From the NCBI GenBank assembly GCA_976226885.1, contig OZ320313.1:165726001-165790000 (forward strand): a stretch of DNA of 64,000 nucleotides. Direction: 5' to 3'. The stretch is from Iphione sp. A-MEVVRFRX5 (Eukaryota). The notes under the pieces were generated by a model, which was not told the DNA's origin, ran no database searches, and worked only from the letters and a program-made list of their open reading frames with translations. How positions within the stretch are numbered: position 1 is the first letter of the stretch; each line of letters begins with the position of its first letter. The position numbers were made by a program, and so were the translations under genes. Positions 13,968-54,026 of the stretch are shown piece by piece.

Positions 13968-14510
13968 TGTCAATGTTCCTGAATCTGAGGGAAGTGGACA
14001 ATCTTCTAATCCCCAGGACATGGACATTGCTCCTAACTCAGGAATGCAAGCAATGTTCCTTATTCAGGGACAAAGGCAATGTTCTTAACCCAAGACTGTG
14101 GGCAATGCTCCGTACCCAGGCAGGTGGACAATATTATTTACTCAGAGACATGTGCAATGTTTCTAACTCAAGACTGTGGGTAATGTTCCTTACTCAGGGA
14201 TGCAAGCAATGTTCCCTATTCAGGGACAAAGGCAACGTTCCTAACTCAAGGATGTGGACAATGTTACTAACCCGGGAACAAAGGCAGTGTTCCTAACTCA
14301 AGGGATGTATACAATGTTCCTTACTCATGGAGGGCGCCAATGTTACTTATTCAAGAAAGTGTACAATGTTCCTAAATCAGGGACAAAGGCAATGTTCCTA
14401 ACTCAGGGAAGTGGGCACTGTTCCTTAATCAGGGACAAAGGAAATGTTCCTAACTCAGGGAAGTAGGCACTGTTCCTTAATCAGGCAGGTGGGCAACATT
14501 CCTTATTCGG
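13968..14510. repeat. Degenerate ~21-22-bp minisatellite (CAGGGACAAAGGCAATGTTCCTAACT-like)
   Basis: CAATGTTCCT and ACTCAGGGA recur throughout ~540 bp. Confidence 0.9.
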
Positions 14511-14580
14511 GGGGATGGGGAAAAATACCTTACTTGGGGGTGGGGACTACCAAGTTGACCACAAGATATGGTAAATAGGA

Positions 14581-14667
14581 CTTGGTCACCTGGCACCACC
14601 AGGCGGCTCCTGGCTCCGGCCTTACCTGGAGGGGGCATCTCGATGCCTGAAAGTGGTCGCCGTCAAT
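14581..14667 (-). pseudogene. Decayed copy of proprotein convertase (PC1/3-like) prodomain exon 2
   Basis: Minus strand reads cag|ATT GAC GGC GAC CAC T TTC AGG CAT CGA GAT GCC CCC TCC AGG TAA GGC CGG AGC = I-D-G-D-H-(frameshift)-F-R-H-R-D-A-P-S-R-*-G-R-S. Compare human PC1/3 [22 protein letters not shown]. Strand, order and phase 0 are correct relative to exon 1. Confidence 0.55.
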
Positions 14668-17073
14668 CTGTGATGGACCACAGGCTGCATAATAGAGACC
14701 ACCTAGCAGGCATGCATCAAACAAATGGACTAAGGAGGCCCTATGGCTTCTGTACACACACCTGTCCGTGAATGGGAGGCTGGTCTGTGTCATCATGAAA
14801 AAAAATTGGAAGCCCTGTCACATATGTATACATGTACATATATCGAAGCTGTGAATTGATGGCAGGTAAGTCTGAGTTCATCATAACTGAAATTAACTCT
14901 GTGTAGGAAAGGCTGTACACTGATGGAAAATCAAGTCCGTGCAAAACAAAAAACTGATCCTTGATGGAGAATACACCTGTGCCGTACTTTGTGAGACTGC
15001 GGACCTGTTTATTCTGGTACAATTCAGAAATCAGAGAACTCTGTCCATAATTAGACCACCCTCACAGTTCTATGTCTAATTGACCTATCGCCGAGACGCG
15101 GATCTAGAAATACGCAGACTAAAGTCGGAAACGTTGTGAATGTTTCCCGTATCTGTAAATCGCCTATTGGCTGTTATTTTCATAAGGCAGAAAGATTCAT
15201 TTTATACGCGGTTCCGTTGAATTATCTTTAGAAAGAGGGATATTTTCATTTCCATGGCCGTTTTGCTTTCTCTCTGTGTGCAGAAAGAATAGCTGAATGG
15301 CAGGGGGATAGCTTTTAAAAGGATTGCATTAATACATACGAGAAAGAAAGAGTATGCCACTTCTAATTTCTGAAAACCAATATATCTTTCCACAAAGGTC
15401 ACTTAAAAAACGCTACGTCGGTTGTAGTAGTGACAAAACGTCTGCAATATAGAAGGAATTACGATGATACGAGTCGCATTTAAAATAGTTCTATCAGGTA
15501 AAAGGCCCAGACATCCTTTCCCTCTTTGAATAAAGCAGGTCTGAGAAGGCGACATTTGAAGTATGTCTTTCTCAGATCGCAATATCGGATGATATCCACA
15601 ACGCCCTCCCTTTGATTCAATGAACAAAACTTCGTCAAGTCTCGCGCTTTCTCGCTGCCCGTCCTTCAGTCGACCCATTCATCACGTCAAGTTGCTACAG
15701 CGTCCTGTCCGCGTCCGTCAGGGGGTAGTCTGGTCACGTGCCAGTCTCCTTTTGGCGGCGACCGGAAGCGGCGGGCAAACACGTAGGGTGTTGATCTTTC
15801 ATTTGGTTCGCCTTCCTCCCGTCAGGAGTCGCATGGCGGGGAGCGGGCGATAATAGGGGGAGGGCAGGCCATTCCACACCTCCCGGGTGACCGCTGATCA
15901 TCACATCAAGGTGTGTTAGGTCCGCAATGGAGGCATATGTACATGCTCCCTGCGTTCGTATGAATAATACACAGGAGAAAAGCTTCCAATATGGACACTT
16001 GAGGGACAGCCGTGCTGAGACTGTCCAGAATGAAAAAAAGGTCGAGCTTCAAAGATGAATGGGTTGATAACCATTATATGTCATTACGATGTAAAATTAC
16101 GCTTACATTTGTGGTAAAATTTGTCATTTACATCGCAAGTTCATGGAAAAACTTTACAGGGCTGTAACTTCTCTGTAAATTAAGCTAGAAAGACAAGCTC
16201 ATATTCTTCTTTAGAACCTCAGTTTTCATTTGGTAGAGATTTTATCGAAATCTAACTAATAGAAGTTAGTCATTTGGGCTTGGAAAGATACCTCCTGTCT
16301 TCATTTTTGTACAGGCAGCATGTGGGCTGTCATAGCCTGATCTGTGGCAGTCCTAGGTTATCCAGCCATTAAAATGATTGTTGTGGCATTATTCCAGGCT
16401 GTATAAGGCAAAAAGGCCATCGGCTTATTGAATGAACACAGATTAGAGAGGTAGCTATAGAAAGCTTACCTTATAGGAGAGGTATCCTCCTTAGAAACGT
16501 AGTTCAGATAGAGGGAAGAAATTATATACACTATAAGATGATGATGATAATGAGACCGATCTCGACGTGACATTCTATTTGGTTTGTTATAACATATTAC
16601 ATATTAATATGTATATGTACTTGCGTTATAATATATCACACGAAAAAAGACTATTTGGTAGCAGATATTGAGGAATAAGTCCTAAATGACAAATAAAGCA
16701 TGTTTGCATGGATATGACTTACCCTATGTATTCCATTGTCTTCATTTCGTACTCAACCAACTCCGTAGATATAGGTTCCAATTTGTTTCGTACTGACATA
16801 TTTCTATAACGTTTACATAGTTGCTAGCATTTGAAAGGATTTCCCATAGTATTTCTCTGAAAGATCTTATTATAATTTCAAAAATCACAAGACAACATAC
16901 TTTCTAGCTGATATTTATTCATCATTTTATTTTATAATAGTTGTACATTCCTTATTTATTGGATAATCTGTAAACATTCACGAAACACACCGCAAGACGT
17001 TGTTGTGCGGACAACGCGCCGTCTCCAACATACGCATACGTCACAATGACATAGGCCTGCTACGCGCGCAATA

Positions 17074-17088
17074 CACCAGATGGCGTCC
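17074..17088 (+). promoter_or_regulatory. CTCF-like motif
   Basis: CACCAGATGGCGTCC resembles the CCACCAGRKGGCGC consensus; motif match only. Confidence 0.3.
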
Positions 17089-19669
17089 CAATAGGGTTAC
17101 ATGTACTTCAGCACTGAACCAGTGAGCAGCAAATAAAGGTTGTAGCATTCTTTAATGCCTGTGTCACACGTTATTTTTTGTGAAATGTGACAGGTTGGCC
17201 AACCCTGCCCACATGTCCTTGTTCCATTCTGTGGCATGTTTATAACGAATATATTTTGATCTCACAGACCTGCTAGAACTGTGTAATAGCCAAACATCAA
17301 CCCAGTTCCACGGCCAGTTCCAAAGCTGTAGATAGTGTGTTGAGAGTGTATTCACGATGTATGCATCTGATATCACAAAGCATTCGCAGCCGCGCCTCAG
17401 GTCTGATATCAAAGAAGACTCTCCTCGACGGGTAAGCTGAGGTATACCATGTTCGTGCAATAGTTCTAGAGATTGGCATGGAGAAACAACGCTAGCCTTA
17501 TGACTATCTGACAGGCCAATATCTTGCCTTGTGTGAGTACATAAATTAGTCAAGTACATGTACAGCAGTAGAGCCATACTCTCTAGGGTGTTGACACACT
17601 TCAAGCATACAATGTATGGTATATTTGGTCTCTTCTGTGAAGCAATATGGCTCAAGTCAGACAGAAAAACTTGGTCTCTTGCCTGAAATGGTCTCCCCTG
17701 CAAGGTGGTCTCCCCTGACCAATGTTGGTCCCTCCCCTGGTTTGGTCTCCCCTGGTTTGGTCTGTGAAATGGTCATTAACCAAGTCTCCACTGTACAATC
17801 AACACTCGTGGAGGTGACCACTTGGGCGACTTGAGGACTTTGGTGAGGGGATGATCATAGCGACTATACATCCTTTCTCCCTCTCTCTCTCACCTAAGTC
17901 AAAGGAATTATTATTCCTTAGATACATGGCTGTTTTTCAGCTGAATTTGCATGAATTTTGCCATTGTTTTGCTGAATATGCATGCATTTGGCGGCAGCAT
18001 TTGCATGAATTTCACTGGGTTTTTAGCCAACTTTCACACCGAAAGTGTGAGACATAATAGTCACAACTCTGGTCACGCCTTATACAATGAATGTCCCTTG
18101 AAAACTGCCCAATGGTCAATCCCCGAGGGTGATAAGTGATAGCTTGGTACTAAATATTGTGGTCGCCCCAAAGAGTTGGTTGTCCCCGATGGTTGGTTGC
18201 TGCCTGTGAGTGTGCAGCATATGATAAAAGTACTAGCAAAAGTCCCATTCTGACTAAAATTGGTCTCTCCTGTGAGTTCGTCCCCCCTGGAAGTTGGTCA
18301 CTATCTGAGGTTCAGATGTCTTCTGCACGATGTTTGCAAATGAAACCATGTAGTAGGGGACCTTATGCATGCACATGAGTGCGGTTTCGTTTTTACAATG
18401 GACATCCAGGATCTACACAACCAATAAAATCTACTCCAAGTCTCTGACAGAACGAGTGCACAAAGCCTTCGCTCCACCTCTGCGTGCGGAGTATACTCTC
18501 AGGAGATTCCAAGTTTTGTATGGTAAGAATAATGCGAGTTTTATTATTAATCCACTCCTTGTGCTTCCATTTGTATGAAACAACAAACAGACAATTGTAT
18601 CGTAGAAACAGAACTACTTTATAGATAATCTCGTATGCTCTGCAGTCCTGTTTTTGTTAGTAAGTACCGGTTGCGTAGCAACGAAGGTGTGGTCTCCTTA
18701 ACAGTTAAAAAAGTTCAAAGTACGGGCGGGTTTTAATGGTCCATATCATTATAGTGAAAATCTAGGCATGCACTTCCATTACATAATCACCAACAAGTAG
18801 AAATAGTTGCAGCTGTGTCATTAATTAGATTATATATGCTGGGGTAACCTATAGAAAAATCTCCGACATTCAAAATTGTTTCTAAAGATATTTTTATTCC
18901 TTTTTTTAGAGAGAGAACCATCTACTAAATGAATGTGTGGCAGATGCGTGTCCACGTACATCTTGTCTTTGGACAGCGGTTTAACATTGAAGCTTTAAAA
19001 CCTTCGCATTATTTTCAAAATCTAAATATTCTTAGTAGCAAATGTCCTCCATAGTATCAGGCTAAACATGTCGTAGCTAGCTCCTGACACAGCTGTCAAG
19101 CTTAATTTGGAGCTTCAGCTGTGAGGGGTTGTGTAAAATAATGACCGTTTTCTCGGAGCTAGCAGTGCTTTTTCTTCTGTAATAACATATTGCGTTGTCT
19201 TGCTCAACTTTCACTTCACAGTTTTCGACGAATGACTCGCACGTTGACATATTCCTTGCGTTCCTTTCGTGTACATCCTGCCACGAAAGTTGACCTTTAA
19301 ATACCCTGTCTCTCTATAAGATTACATGTATATGTAACTTGCCTTGCCAGTCAACCAGTGATGTTTCCTTACTAACATTATGGTAGAATACGGTGGACTA
19401 GCTTCTGTGAGGTCCTTCAAAACCTCCTCTGATTCATGTCCGTGCGAAATGTAAATTTTTGACAAATCCATAATGCTGACAATGGATTCTGGGCAAATTC
19501 TGGATAAATTCTGGTCAGAGCTGAATATTTATCTGACATGTATAGAGCCAAAAAGAAATAGGCGTGTTTCTGTTTACGACCATCCAAAAAAAATGAGGTA
19601 CGGAGGGGGTACTGTTTTTTGTTTGTAAATTTTTCCACTTTCTTCCTTCAATAATAAAGACAATGTAAA

Positions 19670-19890
19670 GAATTTTGACCAATTTACATGAGTTTACACC
19701 AGTTGTTTTTGCTGAATTTCCATGAATTTTCTTGTTTTTCTACTGAATTTTCCAAAGCATGTGCTGTGAAAACATATATCTAAGGAAATTCAGCCTTGGA
19801 AACTCTTTGGGGCCAAAAAAACTTTTAGGTAGGGTGAGGTTTTACTAGGGAGGGATGGATAACCAGAAACACATCTATTTTTGTGGGGCC
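19670..19890. mobile_element. Fragment of a dispersed repeat; inverted homologue at 30985-31215
   Basis: ATATCTAAGGAAATTCAGCCTTGGAAACTC...TAGGTAGGGTGAGGTTTTACTAGG matches the reverse complement of CCTAGTAAAACCCCACCCTACCTA...GAGTTTCCAAGTCTGAATTTCCTTAGATAT at ~31023-31098. Confidence 0.75.
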
Positions 19891-20733
19891 TTGCCTAATG
19901 CAATCTAGATAATCCAAATCCTCAGATAATTCGGACACTCGCCTGTTAACACCACCTTTCATTCTACACCTATTTTAAAATCATCACTACGGAATGTCTC
20001 AAAATCAATGCGAAGTAGGTTTTTTTTCGGACCCACATCTTCTTCATTTCACGAATGTACCGTTTACTTCAGAAAGGCAGTAAGTGCAACCATCAGGTCA
20101 TAAGATGACGCATAGAATACACTGCCACTGGGCAGTTCTCCCTTGGATCCCTCTCGTGCAGAGAGACAAGGGAGGGCTGGGCGAGAGGGATTTTGATTCC
20201 ACACTTGCCCGCTGCAGCAGCTAGGGCAGCACCTGAGGCCCGACACCGAGATCCTTCATGTGGTTATTACCGACGTGAAGGTCACCTTGGGGTGATAGAG
20301 GCCGAACGTAAATAATATCGAACAGTATATGTTCTAGAAATATCCCCCTCGGACTTTCCAAAGAGTCTCCGGGTGCTTTTCTTCGTAAGCTTGCCGGTGT
20401 GGCGTCATTGGGAAAGGTGCTCGTATATATATATATATATATATATTTAGACTATTCCGGACAGGGTGTTAGCCTGAATTCCCATGTATGACGGGGTCTT
20501 ACCTGTGCTCCTGCTCTTATACTAAAAAGGCTTTTATTTCATTGATTTGATTTTTACCCCCCAACAAAGAAATAGCGAAATCTGCTGATTTTTTTGTTTT
20601 TTTTTCAGGAGAAACATAGGCATGGAACATGGACACGTGAATATTAGGGCTTGGATGTTAATGACACTTTTATTGTATGCATATTCATGTACAAACATAG
20701 CTTGGAGGAACATCATTGGTGATGACGTTGATT

Positions 20734-21090
20734 GCGGAGTTTGCTCAGGTGGGTAGAGTGCTGACTAGCAGGAGTTCAAGAGTTCAAGACCACTGGTCTA
20801 TTGACTGAGAGGTTGCAGGTTCAATCCTAGACCCAATACTCTTGATCATGCCCAGATGGATTAATTTACTGTTGCCCCAACCCAGAGTGGCCTACAACTT
20901 GTAGAAAAGCGCATGGTTAGACAGGATTCTGTTCCCTGCGTACAAAAGGACCCCAGAAACCTATTCAAAATATGAGAAGGGGACAATTAGTTCTCAGTAA
21001 TGGCTGGTAGTATGCTCCTCCGGGAGGATATGGAAGAACAGCATAAATGTAGCTGAACATCGAGTTCCTGGTTAAATATACAATAAAATG
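20734..21090 (+). mobile_element. tRNA-derived SINE, copy B (extra/chimeric head)
   Basis: Body collinear with copies A and C; A-box-like TTGCTCAGGTGGGTAGAGTG and two B-box-like motifs. Confidence 0.85.
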
Positions 21091-23115
21091 AGCAATAACT
21101 AGTAATCAGACAAACGACTATCAAATTCATCTACTATTTTTGTTTGCATACATATAATATAGTAAAAATGAATGGAATCTCGGCAAAGTTTAAAGATAAT
21201 AATGTGCCTGCCAGAAAAAAGTTTCTCTTTTGGAATATTTACCTGGAATCATGTTGATTATGCCACAGTTGCTCGGGAGGAGAAACACTGCACGTATCAT
21301 AAGAGAGTTAATGCGTGTTGCGCTGTCATATAAGATACATATTCTTATTATGGCGCCGCACCACGCATTACGACCACTGCACTGACTACCTCGCCCCTCT
21401 CTGCCCACGTTCTCCCTCAGGTGTATATCGTCCATTCCTAACACTTACTCCGCTGCACCCTACTCCTCATACCTTTGGCCCTCTCGTAAACTGTAGTATC
21501 CAAGTCAAATGTTTTCAGCATATCCTTCTGTTTCCACCTGAAGCGCAGAATATGTGGCGAAAGTTGTGTTGTTGTTTACAAAAGCGAGATTCATTCAATG
21601 AACACAAAAATACAACTTTTTCCTCATATCCTAGCATCCAAACAAATGCATGCTATGGTTTTAAAAGAAGTGAATTCACTTTTGGCTACTAAAATTTCTA
21701 CAGTTAGCACATTTCAGAAACCGAGCCGAATATAACAAGTACTCTGAAGCTTTTCAAATCAGTTTTGTTTCTACCTGTACCTGTACATATCAAATATGAT
21801 ATCATATGCCTTTAGTCATATGTATGTTTCACGTTCTAGCCTTTCCTTGTTAATTTCTTCCTCCCGTATACCTCCCATTGAATAGTCTTGTTTAAAAAAG
21901 TCTGTTTCAGGCAACCCGATCGACTTAATTTTTTGGTCTTAATGGCACCTTTTAATTGTTTATTGTTTTCTGAATATCTTGGTTCTAAATAAAGCCACAG
22001 ATTCCTACAATACGTCATCTTCTTTCTGAGATCCTTAGCATTCACATGATATAAGTTCCATTAAGATCCAAGTGCTACTTTTAAGCATAGAAACATACAA
22101 TGATTGTTTTCAGGTTCCATTCACAATGATACCAAAAAAAACAAACAAGGTGCAAATAAAACAAACCCACGTACTTACACTATATTTTTCTGTATGTTAC
22201 TATAAAAACAGATGTTTTTAGGCCTTATCTTCCTTTTTTCTTTATAATCAGCTAGTTTCTATATATATATATATATCCAATAATCTACGTTAGTCCTTAA
22301 CAGGTTGTCTCTGTTCGACAACCGCGTGTTTTTTGCCCCGAGCAACTTTCTTCTGCTTCTCCATTCTCACGACATTGTCCATTCTATCACGTTGATGTGA
22401 CCCTCCCCCCCTCCGCTAGAGGCCAAGTCATGAATGAGTGCGTATACAGATGATACGGCGTGTGTATACACGTATTGTTGCCGAATACCAGCCTCGGTAG
22501 TCCATGCATGAGGCGTGTTACGTTCAACGGTCCGTGGGGAATTAAATTTATCGTCAACTGATCAAATATTAATGATGTACTCTAAGTATGTTGATAAACT
22601 CCAAGTATGTTGTGAAATTGCTATATGCGGGTATAACGGTATCCTGTGAGCCGTGAAAAAGTTAAATAATTTTAAATCATAGTCATTAGTTCAGAATATA
22701 TACGTTATAGGGCGTATGGATTGCATCCTCGACTAGCATCTTTAGTCCTCTAACATACAAACCTGCTGAGTTGTAAGACGTGCAGGGAAAGTAGGCATTT
22801 CCTCAGGTAGACAGGTCAAACGGCGGGGGGCCACGCGTGAAGTGGCCTGGGGCCTTCTGCACCTGTGCAAAAGGAGGGGGTTCGCGATACGGTGCTCGAG
22901 GCGGAACGATCTGCCGCCTGAGCCAATACCGAACTGTCACTCGAGCTTGTAGAAGTCCGCCTGTACAAATGTGTTCCTTAAATGGAGCCAGCAGGGGAGG
23001 TCCATCAACGTGTCATGTGGCATTAAACCTGACGTGAAGAGATTGTATTGTAGGCATATTCTACATTCATCAATCGGTTATATATGTGCTGTTGGTACAG
23101 CGGGCTACAGCTAGC

Positions 23116-23415
23116 TGCCACTGGCATTGGAATCCACGTAAAACGCATCAACTAACGTGGTAATTTTAGTCTTTGAAAGGCGCATTATTTCCAATATTAT
23201 GGATTAAAAAATATACCAGATTTATCTAACAGATGCCAGTAGAGGTACCTCCATTTCACTTAGCTGTTGGGACAGTGGCTTTGGCTACCACTGGCATTGC
23301 AATCCATACTATAATGTATTAACTGCCGGGTGCTTTAGTCTTTGAGTATCACATTTCTGATTTTATGTTTGAAAAAAAAATCGACATAATTATCTTACAG
23401 ATGCCAGTTACAGTC
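23116..23415. repeat. Diverged ~170-bp direct duplication
   Basis: CCACTGGCATTG(G/C)AATCCA at 23118 and 23288, with TTTAGTCTTTGA and ACAGATGCCAGT in both copies. Confidence 0.75.
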
Positions 23416-25702
23416 TACCTCCAGTAACATTTCTTTTCCTGGAAAAAATCTTTATTAATTAGATGGCGCGTCAACTTTTATTTAATTAAAGGTGTAGGAT
23501 GATCCGAGAAAGGTGAATATTTTTTGTAAAAAAAAAACTGAGGGCGGGAATGGCTGGTTAAAAGTTCCATCGGGTGTAGAGTAAGATTTTTTTAGAACGG
23601 ATGCCTGTGTCGCGCGACGGATATCCGGGATTCAGCGGATGAGAGACGCCCAAGCGCACCTGATATGTACCCTGATCGGAATATCAAGGTTTAGGGAGAC
23701 TATTTATCGGGACGTCAGTGAGGGGATATTGGCATAGAGACGAGGTAAAATGAACCCTAATGGCTGCACGAGGAGTAGCGGCAGAACCTGTTCCGACTAT
23801 TAATCATCTCCCGAAACAGTTCAATATTCTATCATTTCTCTTTCTGTATTCGATGTCGGTCCCATTAGGGTACTTATGAAAGTGTCTCTTACTCCGCTTG
23901 GGTCAATTAAATTCTCTCTTACCGTTTTATACCATTCAGAAATGTGTGCACCTTTTTTTCTGTGCTCCAGTAGTTTACTTTTACTAATACGTTTTATTTG
24001 TTCATTAGGACAGAATAAAACACTCTTGGGAGTCGTCGAGGTTGTTTTTGATCTGAACTGCAATCTATGCGAATGAATACAGACAGCGATATGGTCCGTG
24101 CTGTTTTTTTAAAATTCGAAATGATTTATATTAGCCTTCTGTTTTTTAGTTGTTTCTTTTGGATCCATGCAAGGTATGTTGGTCATTTCAAACTCCATGT
24201 GTTATTACAACAACACGTAGGGGTGTCCCTTGGCAGACCAGGCAGCCTACCACTGCCGCTTGGCATCCATTTTTAATAGCTACTGCCTTTCAGCTTATGA
24301 CAACATGTTACCACTACATCACGGAAAGGTACACATGCAAATTGTAGTTTTTAAACTACGTTCTTCATACTGTAATCATAAATATTAATACAAAAAATCA
24401 TGCCCCTTTTGTACTGAAATGGTTCTTTTCCTTTCTTTTATAGAATTAATAATTTTGAAATTATGCCTTTGATACAATCTATTCGTCTCTGTGTCATGAT
24501 CTGGTGAATATTTCATAACCCAGCGGCGACTTAAACACTGTAGCATATTGATTAAAGGTAAAATTATCTGACAGAGACTCTCCTTTTTTATGCATGAAGT
24601 ATGTATCGTACAGACCAAATACGTCTGACATTCAATAACACACGCTGTGGCCGCGCCTGACACATGAGGAGAAGGCCGGTAAAACGATGCCGACACTGTG
24701 CTGATTGCGAGCTGCCGTGGAACACGCAAACTGTCGGCCTCAAGTTACGTTACACCGGCCCTGATCCCAGGGCCAGCGCATACTTCTGTGTCAGTATGTA
24801 AAGTCACATACTCACACCAGCGAGGGGGTGGGGGGGGTGCGGTTGGGGAGGGGGAGGGGAGAATAAACTCTTTGAGAGTGGTGTATGGAGATATTTGATA
24901 AACAGTATCAATTAGCATGACAACAACGTTGTCACCGGTCTAGAGTCAGACCACACTTCTGTGTATGTATCTACAGAGGCACAACCTTTTCATGGTGAAT
25001 AAAATCTCGTGTTGTAGATGATTTGATAAACGGGGGCCCACTACATTGCATGGTTCTTCGTTGTTTAATCCCAGGCTGTCCCCGACTTGATATCAGTGTA
25101 TATAATATTCATGTTTCTCTGAGAATGGAGGCGAATAAAAAGTCTGATCGTTTGATAAGCACGTCTATAATTCCTTGGTGAATAACATATAGATAACAAA
25201 TGGAACCAGACCACACGATGTGCATGCATGTATTCCGAGCATAAAACTGCATTGTAAAACAAACTTTCAGCTTTGCCACTGACTTATCCGTAGACGAGAA
25301 ACTATTGTTGTGCTATTGTATGTTTTCATACATTTATTCCGGGGGGGCATTCACATTTCCGGTTCAGTTATTTTCGTTTTGATAAAGAGGGACGTTTTAC
25401 TTGAGAGATTCTTTATTGTTTTTGAAACGCTGGCTCAGTCATACAGACAAAATTAAATCATCCTTGGGCAAATAATTAAAACCCCACATTAGCAAGATAA
25501 ATAGCACAATAGAAGAGCAATACCAATCTCCGTATTCTTTAAAAGGTTTCAGAACTCTTTTATTTTTATTGCAGGGGACATCTCTTGGTATTTTGATTAA
25601 TAAATTCAACTTCAGTAACCCCACTGAAGATCGGTAGCTGTTAACGATGGACAAGAAAGAGCAATGTTGGCCTGCAGCCACAGCACACATGAGTGGGGTG
25701 TT

Positions 25703-26030
25703 GAGCCCCTACCTTGTATGGCTTGGGCCCCGGCCGTCGGTAAGTGCATCTTCCTGTCAGTCACAGTGGTATGGGGAGCAACCCCCATGGCGGTACACTG
25801 CTAGGCCCAGCAAGTTGTCCCAGATGTCCTTCACCAACAGCTACCTGCCCTCTCTTCAGAGAGAAGCAAGGTAGGCCAACAGCCATGGCACACATAAGTA
25901 GGGCGTGGAGCCCAAACCTTGTGTGCCTTGGGTTCCAGCCTTTGGTAAACACACCTAACTGTTAGCGGCAGTGGCATGGGATGCAAAGCCCATGGCGGCA
26001 CACTGCCCGGCCCCGACAAATTGCTGTCTT
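25703..26030. repeat. Diverged ~205-bp direct duplication, GC-rich
   Basis: GAGCCC..ACCTTGT.TG.CTTGGG...CAGTGG.ATGGG...CCCATGGCGG.ACACTGC occurs from 25703 and again from 25908. Confidence 0.7.
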
Positions 26031-26635
26031 GTTGTCAAATGCCTTGCAAGAGTTAATGTCATGCATAACTGGGGCACACAACCCCTAGTCTGTGTGGTTT
26101 GGAACCCATCCCATGTTAGCACACCTATCCCATCTGGGCCCAGTGTCATGTGGAACCCTTCATTCCTCAAGCACTGGCAGACCCAAACTGGCCAAAGCTT
26201 GGACGGTAGTTGGTGTCCGAACCCCCCCTCATAGCCTTGAGGCTGCCCAAAACAGGGGAGACAGCATGCATAGTCGGTGGTGGAGTCCCTAACTTGCGTG
26301 GCTTAGGGATACCCCCATGGCAGCACACCACCTCGGCTGCAGACACTTGGGGCAAAGACCCCATGGCAACACCCTGTAGTGACTGCACCCAATACCCTCC
26401 ACCCAAGACAACAGCTATCCTCACCGCAGCTCTGCAGCATCTGATGAATGAGTGACACACTACAATTACACATGTAGACTGAAGAAACTCCAACTCATAA
26501 TTGGGCTGCCTCACCAGGGAAGCCCCAGCCACAAATTGGCTTAATAGAACCGAAACCAAACCGAACGCCACTGAATTAATTTCTAAAAATGTAGTCCTGG
26601 TCTATCACTCCCCTGCTCTCCGCTGTCAAAATGAT

Positions 26636-26799
26636 TACTGTAGAATCCCTATTTCTGACTGCCTCTTTTTCCGCCCAAATTCAATTTCAGACCGTTTTAT
26701 CTGGGAATAGAAGTGGGACCTCAATTTCTGACTAAATTTACCAATGTAACAATTTTTGGTCAGACCCAAGTGATGGTCAAAAATAAAGGTTCCACTGCA
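26636..26799. mobile_element. TA-type MITE; inverted homologue of 56863-57045
   Basis: TACTGTAGAATCCCTATTTCTGAC ... AAAGGTTCCACTGCA; the TTTTCCG.CCAAAT.CAATTTC core is shared with the reverse complement of 56990-57045. Confidence 0.7.
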
Positions 26800-27679
26800 T
26801 TTGTGTTTGTGTGTAGCATTGTACGTCCTTCGTCTGCTTCCTTCTCTCCCTTTCTGCCTGTCGTACTTGTGCTCATTGTGCAAACTAACCATTAGGTCAA
26901 TAAATAACAGCTAATCATGTGCAAGGTTAACATGAATAAATAAATATATATGGCCCCTTTAAATTGATTAAGAAATTCATCATGCACATGATAATTAAGC
27001 ACGTTTCCACTATCAAACTCAGTTAATTATATGACCTTTCCCATCTGAATATACTGGACCAGCTAGGCTGCCCCGGTCAATACCAATTCACCCGGTGTAC
27101 TAATAACATCACCAGCACCACCTGGTGCTCCTGAGTAATTTTGCTGAAATGACGTATACTCATTCGCATCCCCCCACCCGCGCCCCCCCCCCCCCTCCAC
27201 ACACCTCGCTCTCATTTGGCTCATATGGCACCTAGTTCGGCTGACTTCTTCCCCTCTCTGTCACATTGACTCTTTTTGCTTTCTGATACTGTTTTCACGA
27301 GCGTAACTATGCACAAGTATATATATATAAAGATAAATATTATACATATATTATATGTGTGCTCTTAACACCGCTTATTTGGGCCTTGCCCTACTAGCCT
27401 TTGTATACGAACCCGGTGCATAACAGCCATAATGGACATGGATATAATGTCATGTCGAGGCAATACGGACACGTCCCCGCACGCCTCGGTGGGTCATCCG
27501 GGACTTCCAGCAGTATGCGCGAGGCCGGCCTCGAGGACGCCGTGGTACGTGGAAGTGTGTATCATTGCCCTCGTGTCTGTACCTCACGCTCGCCATGGTT
27601 GATGTCTGGTTTGCCTCAGTTTTATCATGATGACCCACCAGTATAAATTGAGAGGAGTTCAACCCCCTAGCGCTCATTT

Positions 27680-27950
27680 TGTCTCTCTCGCCCTATTCCC
27701 CTCTCTCTCCTCTCTTTCTCCCCCTTTTTTCCTCTCTCTTTCCCTCTCTTTCTCTCTCTCTTTCACTTTCTTTCTCTCTCTCTTTCACTTTCTTTCTCTC
27801 TCTCTTTCCCTCTCTCTCTGGACTCTCTCTCCCCTTCTTTCTTCCTCTATCTTTTCCTCTCTCTTTCCCTCTTTTCTCTCACTCTCTCTCATTCCCTCTC
27901 TTCGTCTCTCTCATTCCCTCCCTTTTTCTCCCTCTCTCTTTCCCCCCCCC
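27680..27950. repeat. CT-rich polypyrimidine microsatellite
   Basis: Directly visible. Confidence 0.9.
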
Positions 27951-29549
27951 CTTCTCTATCGGAAGTCCCGACAGGTTCCTATAACTAAATTTTCACTCCT
28001 AAAACCGAAGAGCCGATTTCTATTAGATTGCTGACTAATTTATACAAACGTGAAAAGCTTACACTAATTCTACCTCGTCACTATAGCATATACAATAAAT
28101 GGGAGTTGGAATCCGTCTCTCAAATAACGGTAGTCAAACAACTAACTCCCTGTAGCCATCCTGTACAATGCATCGACTTTCCGCCGACATTTTATTCACA
28201 AACTTTTATACATGACCTCATACCGCGTTCCGAGACGAAACTGGATCGACAAGTGACACCAAGGCTGAACATAAACGTGCGCATCGTATGACTACAAAGG
28301 GAGATTTGCTTCGAAACCCATCCCAAATGACACCGCTTTTTACATTAGAACATATCTTTTTTTATGGATGATAGATTGCCCCTTGTAATGAACGTGATAA
28401 TAATATGAGGTTGGCCAATGAAATGCATTGATACAGATATTGAATATAAACTGAATGAACATGAAACTACTACTGCTGCTTCCACAGTTCACATTGAAAA
28501 GAAGTCAGCTGTCTACTGTAAACCGACATCCCTTGACATACTTAGAAACAGCGACGTAGCCCCTTGTTTAAATACATGTACGTATAGGACATCAAATAAC
28601 ATATTTCCAAATGTTCATAACATCGTATTCTTAGGGACAGCGGCTTAGCCCCACATCACCAGCTTGAATGATATACATGTATTTCACATTAAGTAAAATT
28701 TGACCTTTTTGTGCTCACTTTTGGGACAGCAGCCAGGCCCCTCAGTTGTACAATTATTCATGGTGTTTTTTTAAAGACATACATTATTATAATCTATAAC
28801 ATACTGTTTAACAAAATTAGTAAACCTTGCATAATTATCTGTAATGAGTTTCACTAGCATGTAATGTATTCCATAATCTATGACATAGTTCACAGCTCTT
28901 TTATAAGTTTCTTTTATAGGCTTCATTATCACCATATGTTTCCTTTTTGTTAGCTTTGTTTCCCTGTCCTCTTCTAGAATTTCGGGATGTTCACGCCCTG
29001 AGATCATTGTACTAGTATTCCTTTTGCTAAACAAGTTCCTTTCTACTTGTTGAAGACCAGATCTTACATCCAGATGCTATGTTGATCATACCGTTTCTGG
29101 CTTTTAAAAACCTTCCTGGTTACTTAGCTCTTTCTCTGGTACTGACTAAAATGACATGCAGTTATGTGCATCAGTATTACTTTCATCAAGTCTACAGCAT
29201 CTCCCTGGGACATGAAGTTCCTTACCTTCCTCAAATAATTGACGTTACACATGCATTTACGAATTGTAGCTAGATACCTCTGAGTCATGGTGAAATGTCT
29301 ATCCAACGCAACTCCTAAATATTGAACTGAGCTTCAGTTTGAACCCATCTAACTCTTTGCCCCCTGCTACACTTGCTTTGTTTTACAGTCGTATGTAAAA
29401 CGTATACATTGGCTTCGTAGTATGTGAACATTTAATAGAACACAGACGTTATTAAGGTTAATGTTTTGCACAAATAAGGCAATGGACCAATAGAAAGATT
29501 CATCGAACTGTACGTCCTATAGGCCAGAGAAAACCCACCTCAAACCATC

Positions 29550-30050
29550 CCCTGTTCTCTTACTCTCATTTTCTCAGAGCTTCATTCCATATACATCATA
29601 TACATGTTATCTAACCTTGGAAATGCTCAGTTTTCTGCCCTTTAACCTGCATCAGACTACCCCTTGTCCTCTCGCTCTTCTCTCTCTCAGTGCTTCATTC
29701 CATGTATATCGTATACATGTTATCAAGCCTTGGGAATGCTCTGTCTTCTGCCTATCTACTAATGCCAAACCACTCCTTGTTCTCTTACTCTTCCTCACTT
29801 TCTTAGTGCTTCATTCCATGTATATCGTATACATGTTATCAAGCCTTGGGAATGCTCTGTCTTCTGCCTATCTACTAATGCCAAACCACTCCTTGTTCTC
29901 TTACTCTTCCTCACTTTCTTAGTGCTTCATTCCATGTATATCGTATACATGTTATCAAGCCTTGGGAATGCTCTGTCTTCCACCCATCTACCAACCACTT
30001 CTTCTTCTCTTATACTCTTCCTGACTTTCTTAGTACTTCATTCCATATGT
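29550..30050. repeat. 116-bp tandem repeat, ~4.5 copies
   Basis: CTTCATTCCAT starts at 29580, 29693, 29809, 29925 and 30036. Confidence 0.95.
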
Positions 30051-30984
30051 ACGCCATATACATACGAGTTACCTAGGAGTGGGCATGCTGTTTTCTGCTT
30101 GTCTATTACACATAGCCCAGTCCATCGTTTGCTGTACTATGTTAGTCTCACTACCAGAGCCGTCCTGTAGGCAATAAAGCTTCAGGAGGGACGAGCAACA
30201 GAAACAGTACGTGTTGAAGAAAGTGCCGGGGAACACTTTAAACAGCTGGAGATGTCGTTTAAGCCCATAAGAAACGACCAGACGACAGTGAAGCCCAACA
30301 GGCGCTGCATTTGTAATAGCACGGGATATATTGGTTTCTGCGGATGCTGAGCTGGTTTTCTTGTGTACCCCCCCCCCCCTGGTGCTCGTCTTTATATCTT
30401 TTTAAGCCAATGTCTAAGGCTATTTGTGCTAATGTGTTCTACAACGTTGGCCTTTCCTTCATGGCATTTTTTTTTCTCTTTGCAGGCCTGGATTGTCTCT
30501 GTCTCACTGCCTTTCCTTTTTTTCTGGCAGGTGTACTTTTCGTCTTCCTGTGTCTCGTTTCCTGGGTAGGTCTTCTCCCTGTTTCCCTCTTTTTCTTTTT
30601 CTTCTACCGTCTCCCCGGCCCTCTCTGTTGCTGTACTAAACTCCTTAGCTCTCTCTTGACTGCTCTGCACTCTCTCTGTCTCTCTCTGTCTCTCTCTTTT
30701 TGTCTCCATCTTGCTCTCTTGGTATGTATGCTGCACCTTTCCGTTTCTCTGCCTCATGGCTTATATACGGTATTTCGCTTCCCAATCTGTCTTTTTCTTG
30801 GCATTTCTGCTGCTTTTAAATATGCCTTCCTCTATTTCTCTTGGTAGCTTTGTCTTCTTGCTTTGTCCCTATCTGTCTGTGTCTGGACAGGTCTGCAACT
30901 TGCTGTCTACGTTTGTCTCTTTTTTCTCGTCACAGTTGCTCTTTATCACTGTTTCCTTCTCTGTCTCTTTCTCTTGGGCAAAAA

Positions 30985-31215
30985 GATAGGTACATGCATG
31001 TGTTTCTAGTTACCCACCCGTACCTAGTAAAACCCCACCCTACCTAAACATTTTTTGGGAGTTTCAAGGAGTTTCCAAGTCTGAATTTCCTTAGATATGC
31101 ATTTTTAGAGCACATGTTTTTTGGTGAATTTAGTAGAAAAACAACAAAATACATAGAAATTCAGTAAATAACTGTAAAACTAATGCAAATTAATCAAAAT
31201 TCTTCACATTTTCTC
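30985..31215. mobile_element. Dispersed repeat fragment; inverted homologue of 19670-19890
   Basis: See 19670-19890. Confidence 0.75.
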
Positions 31216-32052
31216 TATGGCTATTGAAAACCAGAGAAAGAAAGTGGAATTTTTTTTAAATGATACCCCACCTCCCTATTTTGGGGGCCTTGGCAGTTTT
31301 GCCTTTGCTGCATCCCTGCCACTCACCTCTTTGCGTGCCTGCCTTCTGTGTGTCTCTGTCTCGGTCCTTCTTTTCATTCTAATCAGGGACGTTCGCACAA
31401 ATATGCGGAATGTCTTTTGACTGGGTCATCACATGATCTTTAGAGAGCAGTTGGTTTGTGGGATCATCCGAATCTCCATGATGCACAACCATTTAATATA
31501 AAAAAATATCAAATGTTTTTTGTAAATGTGGTGAAATGTATCCAGCTGATTAAATTACTCATATCCATGTAATTTGAAATATTTTTAGAATGCTTGAAGT
31601 GCCCTATACCTTTGCTTTTACACATATTTTCATTTTTTCTTTAAAGATAGAAATTCCATTGGCATCACCTTTCAGTCGATGCTCATCGATGCTAATTAAA
31701 ACATTTCGGTCGCTCTGTGGCTTTATGCTAATATTTTAAACATCTTAATGAAATTAATCATTTATATTCATACGCGCGCAGGTTCTCAAAGGTCACGCAT
31801 CTCACAGGTAAAACGCATGCACTACGGAGTCCAATTTTCACCAAAAACCCTCCTAAAATATCTTTTTCACCAGGTTTTGGAGCTGCACCGTGTAATGAGA
31901 TCACTCGTGTAATAACACCATTTTGGGTCCAAACCGCCGGGGGTGGGGTGGGGGTGGAGGGTCATTGCCATAATGGCTGACATTTACCAGATGCGGATGT
32001 TCCGTAAATTATAAGCCAACTACTGGACCGCCCATAAAGTGTGACCATCCGA

Positions 32053-32061
<9 letters not shown>

Positions 32062-32105
<44 letters not shown>
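32062..32105. repeat. (CA)n microsatellite
   Basis: Directly visible. Confidence 0.95.
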
Positions 32106-32106
<1 letters not shown>

Positions 32107-34399
32107 CGGTGATCTCGTATTTTCACTGTCACAACGTCAGCCAACGTTCAGGAAACGTTGGCGAAAAGGGTTATTGTTATTATCAAGGGTTAATAGGCCG
32201 AATATATCACTCGGCCCTGCCTTCGAGAAGCAACACGTTTTGCCGAACTGACGGCTCCTGTTTCCGGGTCCAAAAAAACGAACCGAAAGCCAAATAAAGG
32301 CAAGACAAAAATGTCGTCTGCTCCACCACCAGAACCTGTTACGTCACACACGTGCGTCCAAAAAGCGAGCGGCCTTGTTTGCCAATGAGTGCGAACAGCT
32401 TGTCTTTCATGTCAGTGTTGATTCAGATGTCCAAGGCGCTTCCTCTCTCGGATTTTTTAACACCCGCAATTACAAACTAACTTCTCCATTTTGATAATTG
32501 GGACGTTTCATCACCGTTGTACTTGCTCTTTTTTTTATGGGGGGGGGGGGGCAAGGCGGCGGGGGGCAGGAGGGAGGTGATGACAGCGGACGCTGCTGGT
32601 CATTTCTGTCAATGCGGGATGGATAATGGGGTGACCCTGAAGATGTGTAAATCGCACATGCTGCTCGGATATGCTATAACGTATACGTCGCCCTGGGAAG
32701 CCAAGCAGTGAGTTGCTCAATACGACTCGAGTGATCCCTTGGGTGGGGATGACTCCAGCCATTAAGTCACCTCGTGAGCTCCTCTTCTTTGAGCTCAGAA
32801 GAGAGTTTATGTCCTCCGTATGCATTTATATACACTCGGAACGCCATAATATGGACAACCCAAGGGGAGTGAACAGAAAGCGTCACACGGACGGTCACGT
32901 ACACATAAAATCCATTATGAATATAGAGAAGAAGCAGTTGATTCTAAGTTAGATGTGTATCCACAAGCTGCTCATATTATCAACTCTATATATACGTGCA
33001 ATCCTATGACTGTCAAAGATATTCCTTTTATAGGGCTCTTTTGTTCCCGTATTCCAAGTAATTTATCGTTTGTACAGTAAACTCATACTACTGTGTCCTT
33101 CAGTGGCTTTGTACGTATAAAAGGCTTTTGTGCTGGAGGAATGCGGTTTGATAAGAATCTAAACGCTCTCTGGACTCGCGGTTAAATGAAATGGAAATAC
33201 ATGTTACCAAAAAAATACTGGACGAAGGTAAATTTCTGTCGACTGCTCGAATATATATCTCTTAAGCAATACAGATCGGGGAGCTACACGGATAAGGTCA
33301 GTGTCATGATGAAAATCGATCAAAGAAGTCCCTTGATGTAAAGTTGTTGAAATTATGAGGAAAATCTATGCAGTAGATGGAAATATAATGTGTGATGTTG
33401 CCTGCGTGGGTAGTCAAGTGCGAAACCCGGTGCCACTGCACAAAGTGCACGTGGTGCATGGGCTGATTTTCTGAAGTTCAATATATGCATTTCTCCGTAG
33501 CGCTGTGTGGGCGTCTGTTTGTTCACGCAGCACTTGTTCAGAGATGAGCCGATGAAATGGAGAATACATGAGCTACAGCACATTTGTTTTATTATAGCAT
33601 GTTTTAAAAAAATATCTAGAGATGCCCCCATTCATCGAGTTCGTCCTTTACCACTCCGCGGGTCTTGATCGATGTTGGAAAAGAAGCGGGAAAATAATGC
33701 AAATTGGTTTTGAATTCATTCAATGATTGACACATGAGTACAGAGGGAGTTAAATAAGGCAGAAACCCCCACATGATGTTGAGAACCTGACCCCAAAAAT
33801 AAGAATTTAAGTCATTTATCAAAAGGCAAGACAAGTCAAAATAGAATGTAACCTACTACGCAAGCTAATCAAGATGTTCCACTCAGGCGTCGTCTGGTGG
33901 AACTTTTTGAAACATATTCTTTATCAAGGTCACTGAAATATTCATTTTCTCATCCAATTTGTATTTACCCATCACAGTAGGCCTACATTTCACAGCGCTG
34001 ATCACGTGGTACTGACGAACCTATGTACTCCCGAAGATAAATAATTCAATATATATATATACCTTTCAGGTAATGTAAAACTAAAAAAAAAACAAGAAAA
34101 AAAACATGGTATGAATTGGATCAAATGTGAGGCGGCCGGCAACTGGCCGAGGTTAGCACTCCTCGTTGAGAAGTTACAGGACGGGCGGTCGAGGGTAATA
34201 ATCATTGGGTTGGCTCATCATAGGATTGCGTTATAGATTAACTATGTATGGGAAGGCACGGAGCCCTTTATGAATGGTCTGAATTCATCATTCCCATGCT
34301 AGACTCCACCTGAATGGACCCCTTGGTTCACCGCTCTCTCCCGATAGACTCTATGGAGCGAGTTCCTCTACTGCCATGCACCAAAGGCTCCCTCCCCTC

Positions 34400-35830
34400 C
34401 TGCATGTACACATGGACCGTGTTAATTACTTCTCAAGATAAACTCTGTGTTAATAGAGCAAGTTCATTATTCTCGTGATCAACTTAATATATGAACAAAC
34501 TGAGCTTGGTACTCTCATGATAGACTCTGTGTAATATGAGATAAATTTACAAATATCATAATTAACTTAAGATAATTTAACTGAGTCATGACAAACTCTG
34601 TGTAATGAGGTGGGTTATAGCTCACTACACCACTCTCATAACTTAATATGATTAAACTGAAAACCCTACTTTCATGATAGACTCAATACAAATGGACTGA
34701 GTCGACTACTCTCGTGATATGTAACATGGGCCAAATTCACTATTCTAATGACCAACTTAATATGAATTAGCTAAATTCAGTACAAACGCTGTGTAACATG
34801 GGCTAAATTCGCTATTATAATAAACTTTATATAAATATACTAAGTTCAGTACTCTCATGACAAACTCTGTGTAACATGGATCAAATTCACCATTCTCATG
34901 ATCGACTTATTATGAATTAATTAAGTTTAGTACTGTCGTGACAGACTCTGTGTAATAAGGTGGGCTATAGTTCACTATGCTATAGAACTCATTACTTAAT
35001 GAGTAAACTGAATACCCTACTTTCACAATAGACTTAGTACAAGTGGACTTCGTGGACTACTCTCGTGATATACTTTATATGAATGGACCAAAGTTGCCTA
35101 CTATATCATGCCAGACTCTTCGCAAATGGATTGATTTCGTTCTCTTACGATAAACTGTATGTGAGTGGACCAAGTTCAAAAATGACATGAACGACTGATT
35201 ACAAATGGACCAAGTTAACTGCAATTATGAAAAGACTCTCATGAAGGGACTGAATTCACTACTCTGTATGAATGACCTGTGGACACCACTTCCATGGTAG
35301 ACTCTGTCTTAAACAGAGTATAACAAAGCATGTGATCTTATTCTACTATCTTCATGACAGACTCAATATGAATGAAATGAGTTCACTGCTCTCATGATAG
35401 ACTCTGTAGAAAGGGCTGAGTTGACTGAGTAGACTCTGTCTTAAACAGAGTTTAACCATGCATATGATGTGATTGCACTACTTTCATGACAGATGCAATA
35501 CAAATGAAATGAGTTCACTGCTCTCATAATAGACTCTGTAGGAAAGGTGAGCTGAGTTGACTTCTCTTTGTATGAATGAACTGTGGACACCACTCCCCTG
35601 ATAGACCCTGTCTTGAACAGTGTTTAACCATACATATGATGTGATTGCACTACTTTCATGACAGACACAATATAAATGAACTGAGTTCACCAAGCATGTG
35701 ATAGTCTCTATATTAATTAATTATTGCAGTACTTTAATGGCAGATTCAATATGAATGAAATGACTTCACCACTCATATAATAGACCCTGTAGGAGAGGAC
35801 TGAGTTCACCACTCTCAGAGACGAGCAGCT
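34400..35830. repeat. Old hierarchical satellite-like array (~33-40-bp motifs with larger duplicated blocks)
   Basis: TACTCTCATGATAGACTCTGT and GAGTTCACT variants recur; 34615-34725 resembles 34965-35072, and 35281-35426 resembles blocks in 35475-35690. Confidence 0.85.
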
Positions 35831-35914
35831 CACGTCATGTTTGTTGTACTACTTGAAGTTTTAACCTGTGCGGGATATAGAAAGGAAAAAAGTGAGTTTT
35901 TTTTGTTTTTTTAC

Positions 35915-53880: not shown

Positions 53881-54026
53881 NNNNNNNNNNNNNNNNNNNN
53901 NNNNNNNNNNNNNNNNNNNNNNNNNNNNNNNNNNNNNNNNNNNNNNNNNNNNNNNNNNNNNNNNNNNNNNNNNNNNNNNNNNNNNNNNNNNNNNNNNNNN
54001 NNNNNNNNNNNNNNNNNNNNNNNNNG
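53881..54026. other. Assembly gap (146 N)
   Basis: Run of N. Confidence 1.

What the first reader, a model, noticed from the sequence alone, without database searches (positions are those of the whole stretch)
14581..14667. Broken second prodomain exon: is this convertase gene dead, or does it carry a discarded duplicate exon?
Seen: 21 kb downstream of intact exon 1, on the same strand and behind a CAG, lies I-D-G-D-H / F-R-H-R-D-A-P-S-R-*-G-R-S. It has a frameshift (restorable by 5 nt or 2 nt), an in-frame TAA and a shortened 3' part. I found no intact exon 2 or catalytic exon in 1-35914. Established: this segment holds the PC1/3 internal RSRR cleavage site, and the prodomain is required as intramolecular chaperone. 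Inference: a pseudogenising paralogue/allele with an intact promoter, or a decayed exon duplicate with the real exon beyond the window (intron 1 >35.9 kb).
Basis: partly seen in the sequence, partly recalled or inferred. Interest (0 to 1): 0.7.

Follow-up and report, generated by a model that had tools for sequence, protein, structure and literature searches.

The report
Chance look-alike, not a broken exon
The supposed broken second exon of this prohormone-convertase gene is ordinary intron DNA that resembles the exon by chance; the real, intact exon 2 lies 18.7 kb beyond the window and no break was seen in the rest of the gene that was mapped.

Summary

- **Real exon 2.** It lies outside the window at G000:C1:165707148-165707252. 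It is 105 nt, runs cag|...|gtaagc in phase 0, and carries the R-S-R-R/S secondary site.
- **Colinearity.** Exon 2 follows exon 1 directly on the PC1 prodomain structure 1KN6: residues 11-40, then 41-75.
- **Gene layout.** Intron 1 is 54,662 nt. Exon 3 (R-V-K-R primary site), exons carrying the catalytic Asp, His, Asn and Ser, and P-domain exons all follow downstream and are open. No sign of a pseudogene was seen.
- **Protein test.** Against the real exon 2 the candidate gives a tblastn E-value of 57 in this window alone, rank 209 of 1845.
- **Frameshift-tolerant test.** It scores 22. 85 equal or better peaks lie on the same strand of the same intron, and the real exon scores 181.
- **DNA test.** There is no DNA similarity, and the shared Ser and Arg residues use different codon families.
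- **The TAA.** It is simply part of a GTAAG.

Real discarded partial exon copies do exist in this gene, but elsewhere. Exon 2's last ~39 nt plus its donor seed a 69-bp minisatellite of 11.7 copies. No sequencing runs were listed, so nothing could be tested with reads.

The parts
35915..36220 (-). Coding part of exon 1 of a PC1/3-like proprotein convertase gene. It holds the start codon, a low-complexity N-terminus, a hydrophobic signal-like stretch and the first 30 residues of the prodomain. It ends ...GGG CAG|gtaaaa in phase 0.
   Evidence: Translation. Pfam S8_pro-domain profile positions 1-28, E 2.6e-4. PDB 1KN6 PC1 prodomain residues 11-40, E 8.7e-8. Genome-wide Pfam hit L006. Junction letters.
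1..35914 (-). The part of intron 1 that lies inside the window. The whole intron is 54,662 nt and continues 18,748 nt beyond window position 1 to the acceptor of the real exon 2 at G000:C1:165707252.
   Evidence: No prodomain, S8 or P-domain hit in this span. Real exon 2 located.
14581..14667 (-). It is single-copy intronic DNA whose Arg/Ser/Pro-rich out-of-frame translation resembles the exon 2 cleavage-site region by chance.
   Evidence: letters; single copy in the genome; protein similarity within noise; no DNA similarity; no convertase hit in PDB.
14626..14667 (-). A 42-nt open stretch flanked by cag| and |gtaagg. It is a frame-preserving pseudo-exon by sequence only.
   Evidence: letters; it is one of 31 such CAG|open 3n|GTRAG-like segments of 30-150 nt in the 35.9 kb of intron 1 inside the window.
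14031..14512 (.). A 26-bp-period minisatellite (18.5 copies, with 52- and 78-bp higher-order periods) lying 69 bp downstream, in the gene's direction, of the candidate. It is ordinary intronic repeat.
16056..16200 (.). A copy of a short dispersed repeat, 79-89% identical to many sites on other contigs. It shows that the neighbourhood is ordinary repeat-bearing intron. It does not cover the candidate.
   Evidence: 1073 first-look candidates; the 40 scored include the query's own place, and the other 39 match only query positions 1-145.

Best explanation
The segment at 14581-14667 is non-coding, single-copy DNA deep inside the 54.7-kb first intron of an apparently intact PC1/3-like proprotein convertase gene. 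Its likeness to prodomain exon 2 is a chance match, built from an out-of-frame reading of GC-rich sequence that yields Pro, Ser and Arg codons. The 'stop' is the TAA of a GTAAG, and the 'acceptor' is one of many CAGs. The gene itself is organised as follows. Exon 1 (window 35915-36220) encodes the signal region and prodomain residues matching 1KN6 11-40. Exon 2 (G000:C1:165707148-165707252, outside the window) encodes residues matching 41-75, including the secondary cleavage site R-S-R-R/S. Exon 3 (about 165691861-165691989) encodes V-H-W-A-E-Q-Q...R-V-K-R, the primary cleavage site. All three junctions are canonical and in phase 0. Exons carrying the catalytic Asp, His, oxyanion Asn and Ser, and then the P domain, follow down to about 165671100. 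What is shown: the sequence, the splice-site letters, the homology statistics and the open frames. What is inferred: that exon 1 is spliced to the distant exon 2 and that the gene is expressed and functional, because no RNA data could be obtained.
For: - The real exon 2 was found by the Pfam prodomain profile at 165707133-165707255 (28.2 bits, over the cut-off).
- Its letters read cag|ATT GGT...CGG|gtaagc.
- It aligns to 1KN6 residues 41-75, directly following exon 1's 11-40.
- Exon 3 and its junctions were read.
- Catalytic and P-domain exons are open, with D, H, N and S in their usual motifs.
- The candidate gives tblastn E = 57, rank 209 of 1845.
- Its frameshift-tolerant score is 22, against 181 for the real exon and 45 for the nearest paralogue's exon 2. 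85 equal or better peaks lie on the same strand of the same intron stretch.
- In DNA alignment to exon 2, 24% of random windows score as well, and 88% do when 300-nt flanks are included.
- A genome-wide DNA search finds only the candidate itself.
- Read directly, the five residues shared in the best stretch use unrelated codons: Ser AGC against TCC, Arg CGC against AGG, Ser TCC against AGC. That is 8 differences in 15 nt. A neutrally decaying copy cannot keep residues while losing their nucleotides.
- True partial exon copies in this same gene lie next to their parents and stay alike: about 71-80% without gaps to the exon 2 unit (88% matches within that array), up to 96% for the exon 9 copy.
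Against: - No RNA or raw-read evidence could be obtained; no run was listed. The exon 1 to exon 2 junction and the silence of the candidate are therefore inferred.
- A duplicate old enough to have lost all detectable similarity cannot be excluded by any sequence test.
- The alignment test has limited reach: distant paralogues' exon 2 also fall into its noise.
Confidence: 0.92

Rival explanations
1. The segment is a very old duplicate of exon 2 that has decayed almost to background.
For: It has the same strand, sits behind a CAG, starts with Ile like the real exon, and has P-S-R-x-x-R-S opposite P-S-R-S-R-R-S. This gene does generate partial exon copies.
Against: The similarity is within noise in protein and DNA. 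The shared residues use different codon families. The known partial copies in this gene are tandem, lie within about 1 kb of their parent, and stay recognisably alike (about 71-96%), whereas this segment is 33.3 kb from exon 2. No flank similarity was found.
Confidence: 0.04
2. The 42-nt open stretch 14626-14667 (cag|...|gtaagg) is a real alternative or poison cassette exon. It would insert 14 residues between prodomain residues Q and I.
For: Acceptor-like and donor-like sites surround a frame-preserving length.
Against: 31 such segments occur by chance in the same 35.9 kb. The insertion would fall inside the folded prodomain, between the parts that match 1KN6 residues 40 and 41. There is no homology to anything and no expression data.
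Confidence: 0.02
3. The gene is a pseudogene, or a pseudogenising allele, with an intact exon 1.
For: In addition, several introns carry partial exon copies with splice sites that could disturb splicing.
Against: All 14 exon segments found are open. Both prodomain cleavage sites, the catalytic D/H/N/S motifs and the P domain are present. Exons 1-3 have canonical phase-0 junctions.
Confidence: 0.02

Closest known systems
Vertebrate PC1/3 (PCSK1, neuroendocrine convertase 1), prodomain structures 1KN6 and 9FIC
   Same: Exons 1 and 2 align colinearly to PC1 prodomain residues 11-40 and 41-75. The secondary site (H-P-S-R-S-R-R-S against H-P-R-R-S-R-R-S) and the W-A-E-Q-Q...R-x-K-R primary site are in place. 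The roles of the secondary site and of the prodomain as chaperone and inhibitor are described in PMC3557230.
   Different: This is an invertebrate-looking gene with a 54.7-kb first intron and a long low-complexity N-terminus. Orthology to PC1/3, as against the other convertase paralogues in this genome (at least five other loci), was not tested with a tree.
Intronic pseudo-exons (chance AG...GT open segments in long introns)
   Same: The candidate has an acceptor-like CAG, a donor-like GTAAG, a short open frame and no conservation signal. It is one of 31 in this intron stretch.
   Different: Nothing sets it apart. It caught the eye only because an out-of-frame reading is rich in Arg and Ser, like the convertase cleavage site.
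Human F7 intron 7 minisatellite, whose first 37-bp unit spans the exon 7 donor (PMC1557585)
   Same: The real exon 2 of this gene is followed by a 69-bp minisatellite. Its first unit is the last ~39 nt of the exon plus the donor and 29 nt of intron. Each of the 11 further copies keeps a GTAAGC.
   Different: It lies outside the window and is unrelated to the segment at 14581-14667. Whether the pseudo-donors are silent here is untested.

Membership tests
Decayed exon duplicate or pseudo-exon of convertase exon 2 (the finding itself) | Significant protein similarity to the parent exon | tested here: not met
   tblastn E = 57, 13.1 bits, rank 209 of 1845. Frameshift-tolerant score 22, against noise up to 39 and 181 for the real exon. 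No Pfam hit at E <= 10.
Decayed exon duplicate or pseudo-exon of convertase exon 2 (the finding itself) | Nucleotide similarity to the parent exon and its flanks | tested here: not met
   Local DNA score 9; 24% of random windows score as well, and 88% with flanks. A genome DNA search returns only the segment itself. Shared residues use different codon families.
Decayed exon duplicate or pseudo-exon of convertase exon 2 (the finding itself) | The breaks (indel, TAA) are real and not assembly errors | not testable with these tools
   No sequencing run was listed, so no reads could be laid. The question is moot if the match is chance.
Proprotein convertase, kexin/furin-type subtilase (the gene) | S8 pro-domain with primary R-x-K-R and a secondary basic site | tested here: met
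   Pfam PF16470 on exons 1, 2 and 3. 1KN6 alignments. R-S-R-R in exon 2 and R-V-K-R in exon 3.
Proprotein convertase, kexin/furin-type subtilase (the gene) | Subtilase catalytic Asp, His and Ser with oxyanion Asn, in open exons | tested here: met
   The D-D-G, H-G-T-R-C-A-G-E, A-S-G-N-G-G and G-T-S-A-S-A-P motifs lie in open frames at 165691104-165680065.
Proprotein convertase, kexin/furin-type subtilase (the gene) | P (homo-B) domain after the catalytic domain | tested here: met
   PF01483, 54.6 bits, at 165671098-165671265. Further P-domain exon segments are at 165675459-165675611 and near 165672069.
PC1/3 (PCSK1) orthologue specifically | Groups with PC1/3 rather than furin, PC2 or PC5-7 in a tree of full-length proteins | not tested
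   The only evidence is that the PDB hits for both prodomain exons are PC1.
Exon-junction minisatellite (F7 IVS7 type), for the array next to the real exon 2 | The first repeat unit spans the exon-intron boundary, so the donor is reiterated | tested here: met
   TRF: period 69, 11.7 copies, 88% matches, L005 750-1552. Units in register show unit 0 as exon 2's end plus GTAAGC, and 11 further units each with GTAAGC.
Exon-junction minisatellite (F7 IVS7 type), for the array next to the real exon 2 | Downstream pseudo-donors stay silent | not testable with these tools
   No RNA runs were listed.

The most novel reading that the evidence does not exclude
The segment at 14581-14667 is nothing, but the gene around it may be unusual. 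At least 5 of its 14 mapped exons have an edge copied into an adjacent tandem array, four at donors and one at an acceptor. Arrays fill 12% of the gene, against 2.3% in the flanks of 30 kinase loci. First-stage notes report similar donor-reiterating minisatellites elsewhere in this genome. If exon-junction minisatellites form preferentially at donors genome-wide, or if the pseudo-donors tune splicing of this convertase, that would be a real phenomenon. My within-gene count (5 boundaries covered, about 3.4 expected from the array density) does not show enrichment.
Probability: 0.1. Interest if true: 0.5.

Novelty: not a real feature. Interest (0 to 1): 0.1.

Why it matters
It matters mainly as a correction. 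The convertase gene is not shown to be dead, and the window simply cuts through its 54.7-kb first intron. Annotators should join exon 1 (window 35915-36220) to an exon 18.7 kb beyond the window. The case also shows how an Arg/Ser-rich cleavage motif is easily mimicked by out-of-frame GC-rich intron sequence. It gives a simple check: a decayed copy must resemble its parent in nucleotides, not only in residues. The exon-edge minisatellites found on the way are a known kind of structure (F7 intron 7), but they are unusually frequent in this gene.

Tried and rejected
- **Sequencing runs.** The search with exon 1 listed none. The raw-read check of the indel and TAA and the RNA junction check could therefore not be done, and read laying was not used.
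- **Earlier notes.** A search by place near the window returned nothing.
- **Rfam.** A scan of 13000-16500 at E <= 1 returned nothing.
- **PDB.** A search of the candidate's frame-1 translation gave only weak unrelated hits with E > 0.7.
- **Short pieces.** The candidate's other pieces between the breaks (5, 9 and a few residues) are below the 20-residue minimum and were not searched separately. The alignment covers them.
- **Transposon origin.** I considered that the candidate might be part of a transposon copy. This is rejected, because it is single copy and the nearby dispersed repeat ends about 1.4 kb away.
- **Enrichment of arrays at exon edges.** I asked whether the exon-edge arrays are enriched at exon boundaries within the gene. 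With 12% array coverage, about 3.4 of 28 boundaries are expected to be covered and 5 are, so there is no clear enrichment.
- The large protein searches were not used, because the family was settled by Pfam and PDB. dN/dS of exon 1 was not possible without orthologues.

Full report
**What is at the coordinates**

On the minus strand the window reads ...cacag|ATT GAC GGC GAC CAC TTT CAG GCA TCG AGA TGC CCC CTC CAG|gtaagg....

- Frame 1 gives I-D-G-D-H-F-Q-A-S-R-C-P-L-Q and stays open.
- The frame shifted by one base gives ...F-R-H-R-D-A-P-S-R-*-G-R-S.
- The TAA is the TAA inside GTAAG.
- The segment is 21,248 nt downstream of the exon 1 donor.

**Exon 1 is a real convertase exon**

- Window 35915-36220 (minus) translates from an ATG through a low-complexity N-terminus and a hydrophobic stretch. 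It ends in [30 protein letters not shown], followed by gtaaaa.
- Pfam places its last 27 residues on positions 1-28 of S8_pro-domain (E 2.6e-4).
- The PDB search aligns it to residues 11-40 of the PC1 prodomain 1KN6 (E 8.7e-8).

**Where the real exon 2 is**

The window is G000:C1:165726001-165790000. Running the prodomain profile over the whole assembly found exon 1 itself, then a hit to profile positions 28-69 at 165707133-165707255. A third hit, to positions 56-79, lies at 165691945-165692016. All three are on the same strand.

- **Exon 2.** The letters read ctttgcag|ATT GGT ACT ... AAC CGG|gtaagc, 105 nt, at 165707148-165707252.
- **Its protein.** The 35 residues include H-P-S-R-S-R-R-S and align end to end with 1KN6 residues 41-75, exactly where exon 1 stops (E 2.2e-4).
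- **Exon 3.** At about 165691861-165691989 it reads ttcag|V-H-W-A-E-Q-Q-I-S-K-V-R-V-K-R-D...|gtaaga.
- **Introns.** Intron 1 is 54,662 nt and intron 2 is 15,158 nt. Exon 2 ends 18.7 kb before window position 1.

**The rest of the gene**

I used Pfam S8 and P-domain profiles and, as separate tblastn queries, the open frames of a paralogue with few introns. These mapped exon segments from 165691178 down to 165671098.

- The segments carry D-D-G, H-G-T-R-C-A-G-E, A-S-G-N-G-G and G-T-S-A-S-A-P, followed by the P domain.
- Motif scans filled in three more short exons.
- All 14 segments are open, and I saw no disabling lesion.
Every search was made exon by exon by reference. Junctions beyond exon 3 were not all verified.

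**Is the candidate related to exon 2?**

1. **tblastn.** I ran the real exon 2 against the window with very permissive settings. It gave 1845 HSPs. The candidate's best one, R-D-A-P-S-R-*-G-R-S against R-S-H-P-S-R-S-R-R-S, has E = 57 and 13.1 bits at rank 209.
2. **Frameshift-tolerant alignment.**
   - That is rank 255 of 591 peaks in the window, and chance peaks reach 39.
   - 85 peaks of 22 or more lie on the sense strand of the in-window intron alone.
   - The real exon scores 181 and the closest paralogue's exon 2 scores 45.
3. **DNA alignment.** The best local alignment to exon 2 scores 9. Of random 87-nt windows, 24% do as well. With 300-nt flanks, 88% do as well.
4. **Genome-wide DNA search.** A search with 14450-14800 returns only the query itself.
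5. **Codon usage.** The residues shared in the best stretch use unrelated codons: Ser AGC against TCC, Arg CGC against AGG, Ser TCC against AGC. That is 8 differences in 15 nt (letters). A neutrally decaying copy keeps residues only by keeping nucleotides, so this pattern fits chance and not descent.
6. **PDB and Pfam.** Neither gives a convertase hit for the candidate.

**Context of the candidate**

- It is single-copy sequence.
- A 26-bp minisatellite lies 69 bp away at 14031-14512.
- A dispersed short repeat lies at 16056-16200.
- There is no Rfam match.
- The 42-nt cag|...|gtaagg open stretch is one of 31 frame-preserving acceptor-to-donor segments of 30-150 nt in this 35.9 kb. It is not remarkable as a potential cassette exon.

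**What could not be tested**

The run search with exon 1 listed no runs; none was listed, which does not mean none exists. I therefore have no raw-read check of the assembly and no splice-junction evidence. The exon 1 to exon 2 join rests on three things: canonical sites, matching phase, and exact colinearity with the PC1 prodomain.

**Real discarded exon pieces, elsewhere in the gene**

Following the gene downstream showed what true partial exon copies look like here.

- **Exon 2.** Its last ~39 nt, its GTAAGC donor and 29 nt of intron form the first unit of a 69-bp minisatellite. The array has 11.7 copies at 88% matches (L005 750-1552, G000:C1:165706382-165707184). All 11 further units keep GTAAGC.
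- **Four other exons.** Similar arrays include the edges of four other exons:

| Array (G000:C1) | Period | What is copied |
|---|---|---|
| 165686220-165687218 | 415 | Exon end ...S-E-A-F-E-E-G-I-K-K |
| 165682007-165682372 | 181 | Acceptor and first 108 nt of the oxyanion-Asn exon, 96% identical |
| 165674742-165675535 | 176-179 | Five copies of a P-domain exon end |
| 165670822-165671154 | 151 | Exon end with G-T-W-Q-L-I-V |

- **Density within the gene.** Arrays of period 10 or more cover 12% of the gene span. About 3.4 of 28 boundaries would then be covered by chance, and 5 are. This is not a demonstrated enrichment.
- **Density compared with other loci.** The flanks of 30 kinase-domain loci have only 2.3% array coverage and no exon-edge array. 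None of seven paralogous prodomain exons has an exon-edge array either.
- **Known analogue.** The structure is of a known kind. The human F7 intron 7 minisatellite spans the exon 7 donor, and its pseudo-donors stay silent because the most upstream site is chosen (PMC1557585).
- **Earlier notes.** Two first-stage notes report donor-reiterating minisatellites elsewhere in this genome. I treat these as leads only.

PC1/3 has a secondary prodomain cleavage site, RRSRR 77-81. The prodomain acts as intramolecular chaperone and inhibitor. Both points are stated in PMC3557230. The real exon 2 carries the equivalent site intact.

**Verdict**

- The pseudogene reading is not supported.
- The guess that the real exon lies beyond the window is right.
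- The 'decayed duplicate' label for this segment is not supported.
- Interest is low.

Noticed in passing
L005:750-1552 (G000:C1:165706382-165707184), outside the window: A 69-bp minisatellite of 11.7 copies at 88% matches. Its first unit is the last ~39 nt of the real exon 2 plus the GTAAGC donor and 29 nt of intron 2. All 11 downstream units keep GTAAGC, so the authentic donor is followed by 11 pseudo-donors, as in human F7 intron 7.
   Followed up: yes
L016:6033-6140 and L016:6214-6321 (G000:C1:165682007-165682372): A 181-bp tandem duplication copies the acceptor region and the first 108 nt of the exon encoding the oxyanion-Asn motif, at 96% identity. The upstream copy has its own ...ttttatag acceptor and a 4-nt deletion further on. 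If that acceptor were used it would disrupt the frame.
   Followed up: partly
L017:8674-9552, L017:4822-5185, L015:145-1230: Three further tandem arrays (periods 176-179, about 151, and 53 within 415) include the 3' ends and donors of two P-domain exons and of the exon ending ...S-E-A-F-E-E-G-I-K-K. In all, 5 of 14 mapped exons have an edge copied into an array, four of them on the donor side.
   Followed up: partly
G000:C1:165660001-165765000 against L021-L050: Tandem arrays of period 10 or more cover 12% of this convertase gene but only 2.3% of the 1.5-kb flanks of 30 kinase-domain loci, none of which has an exon-edge array. The gene looks unusually rich in minisatellites. The comparison is rough, because many of the kinase loci are intronless.
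   Followed up: partly
window 46795-46842 (+), window 55205-55258 (-), G000:C1:165669663-165669707 (+): A short conserved peptide (I-Q-W-N-P-S-T-K-D-T-L-Y-K...) recurs in three places around the gene and in an open frame next to another convertase gene (L020). It is probably a dispersed repeat or transposon fragment.
   Followed up: no
window 53881-54025: A run of 145 N (assembly gap or masked stretch).
   Followed up: no
window 36000-36220 (-): The N-terminus encoded by exon 1 is very low in complexity, with Gly, Ser, Val and His/Gly runs from GGC/GTC/TCG repeats before the prodomain. The true start codon and signal-peptide boundaries are uncertain.
   Followed up: no
G000:C1 at 29.01, 46.80, 92.4-92.8 and 139.09-139.19 Mb; G000:C4 at 76.38-76.42 Mb: At least five other convertase-like loci have prodomain, S8 and P-domain hits. 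The paralogues share the exon 1/exon 2 boundary (...G-Q|I-G...). One of them (C1, 92.4-92.8 Mb) appears to span about 400 kb.
   Followed up: no
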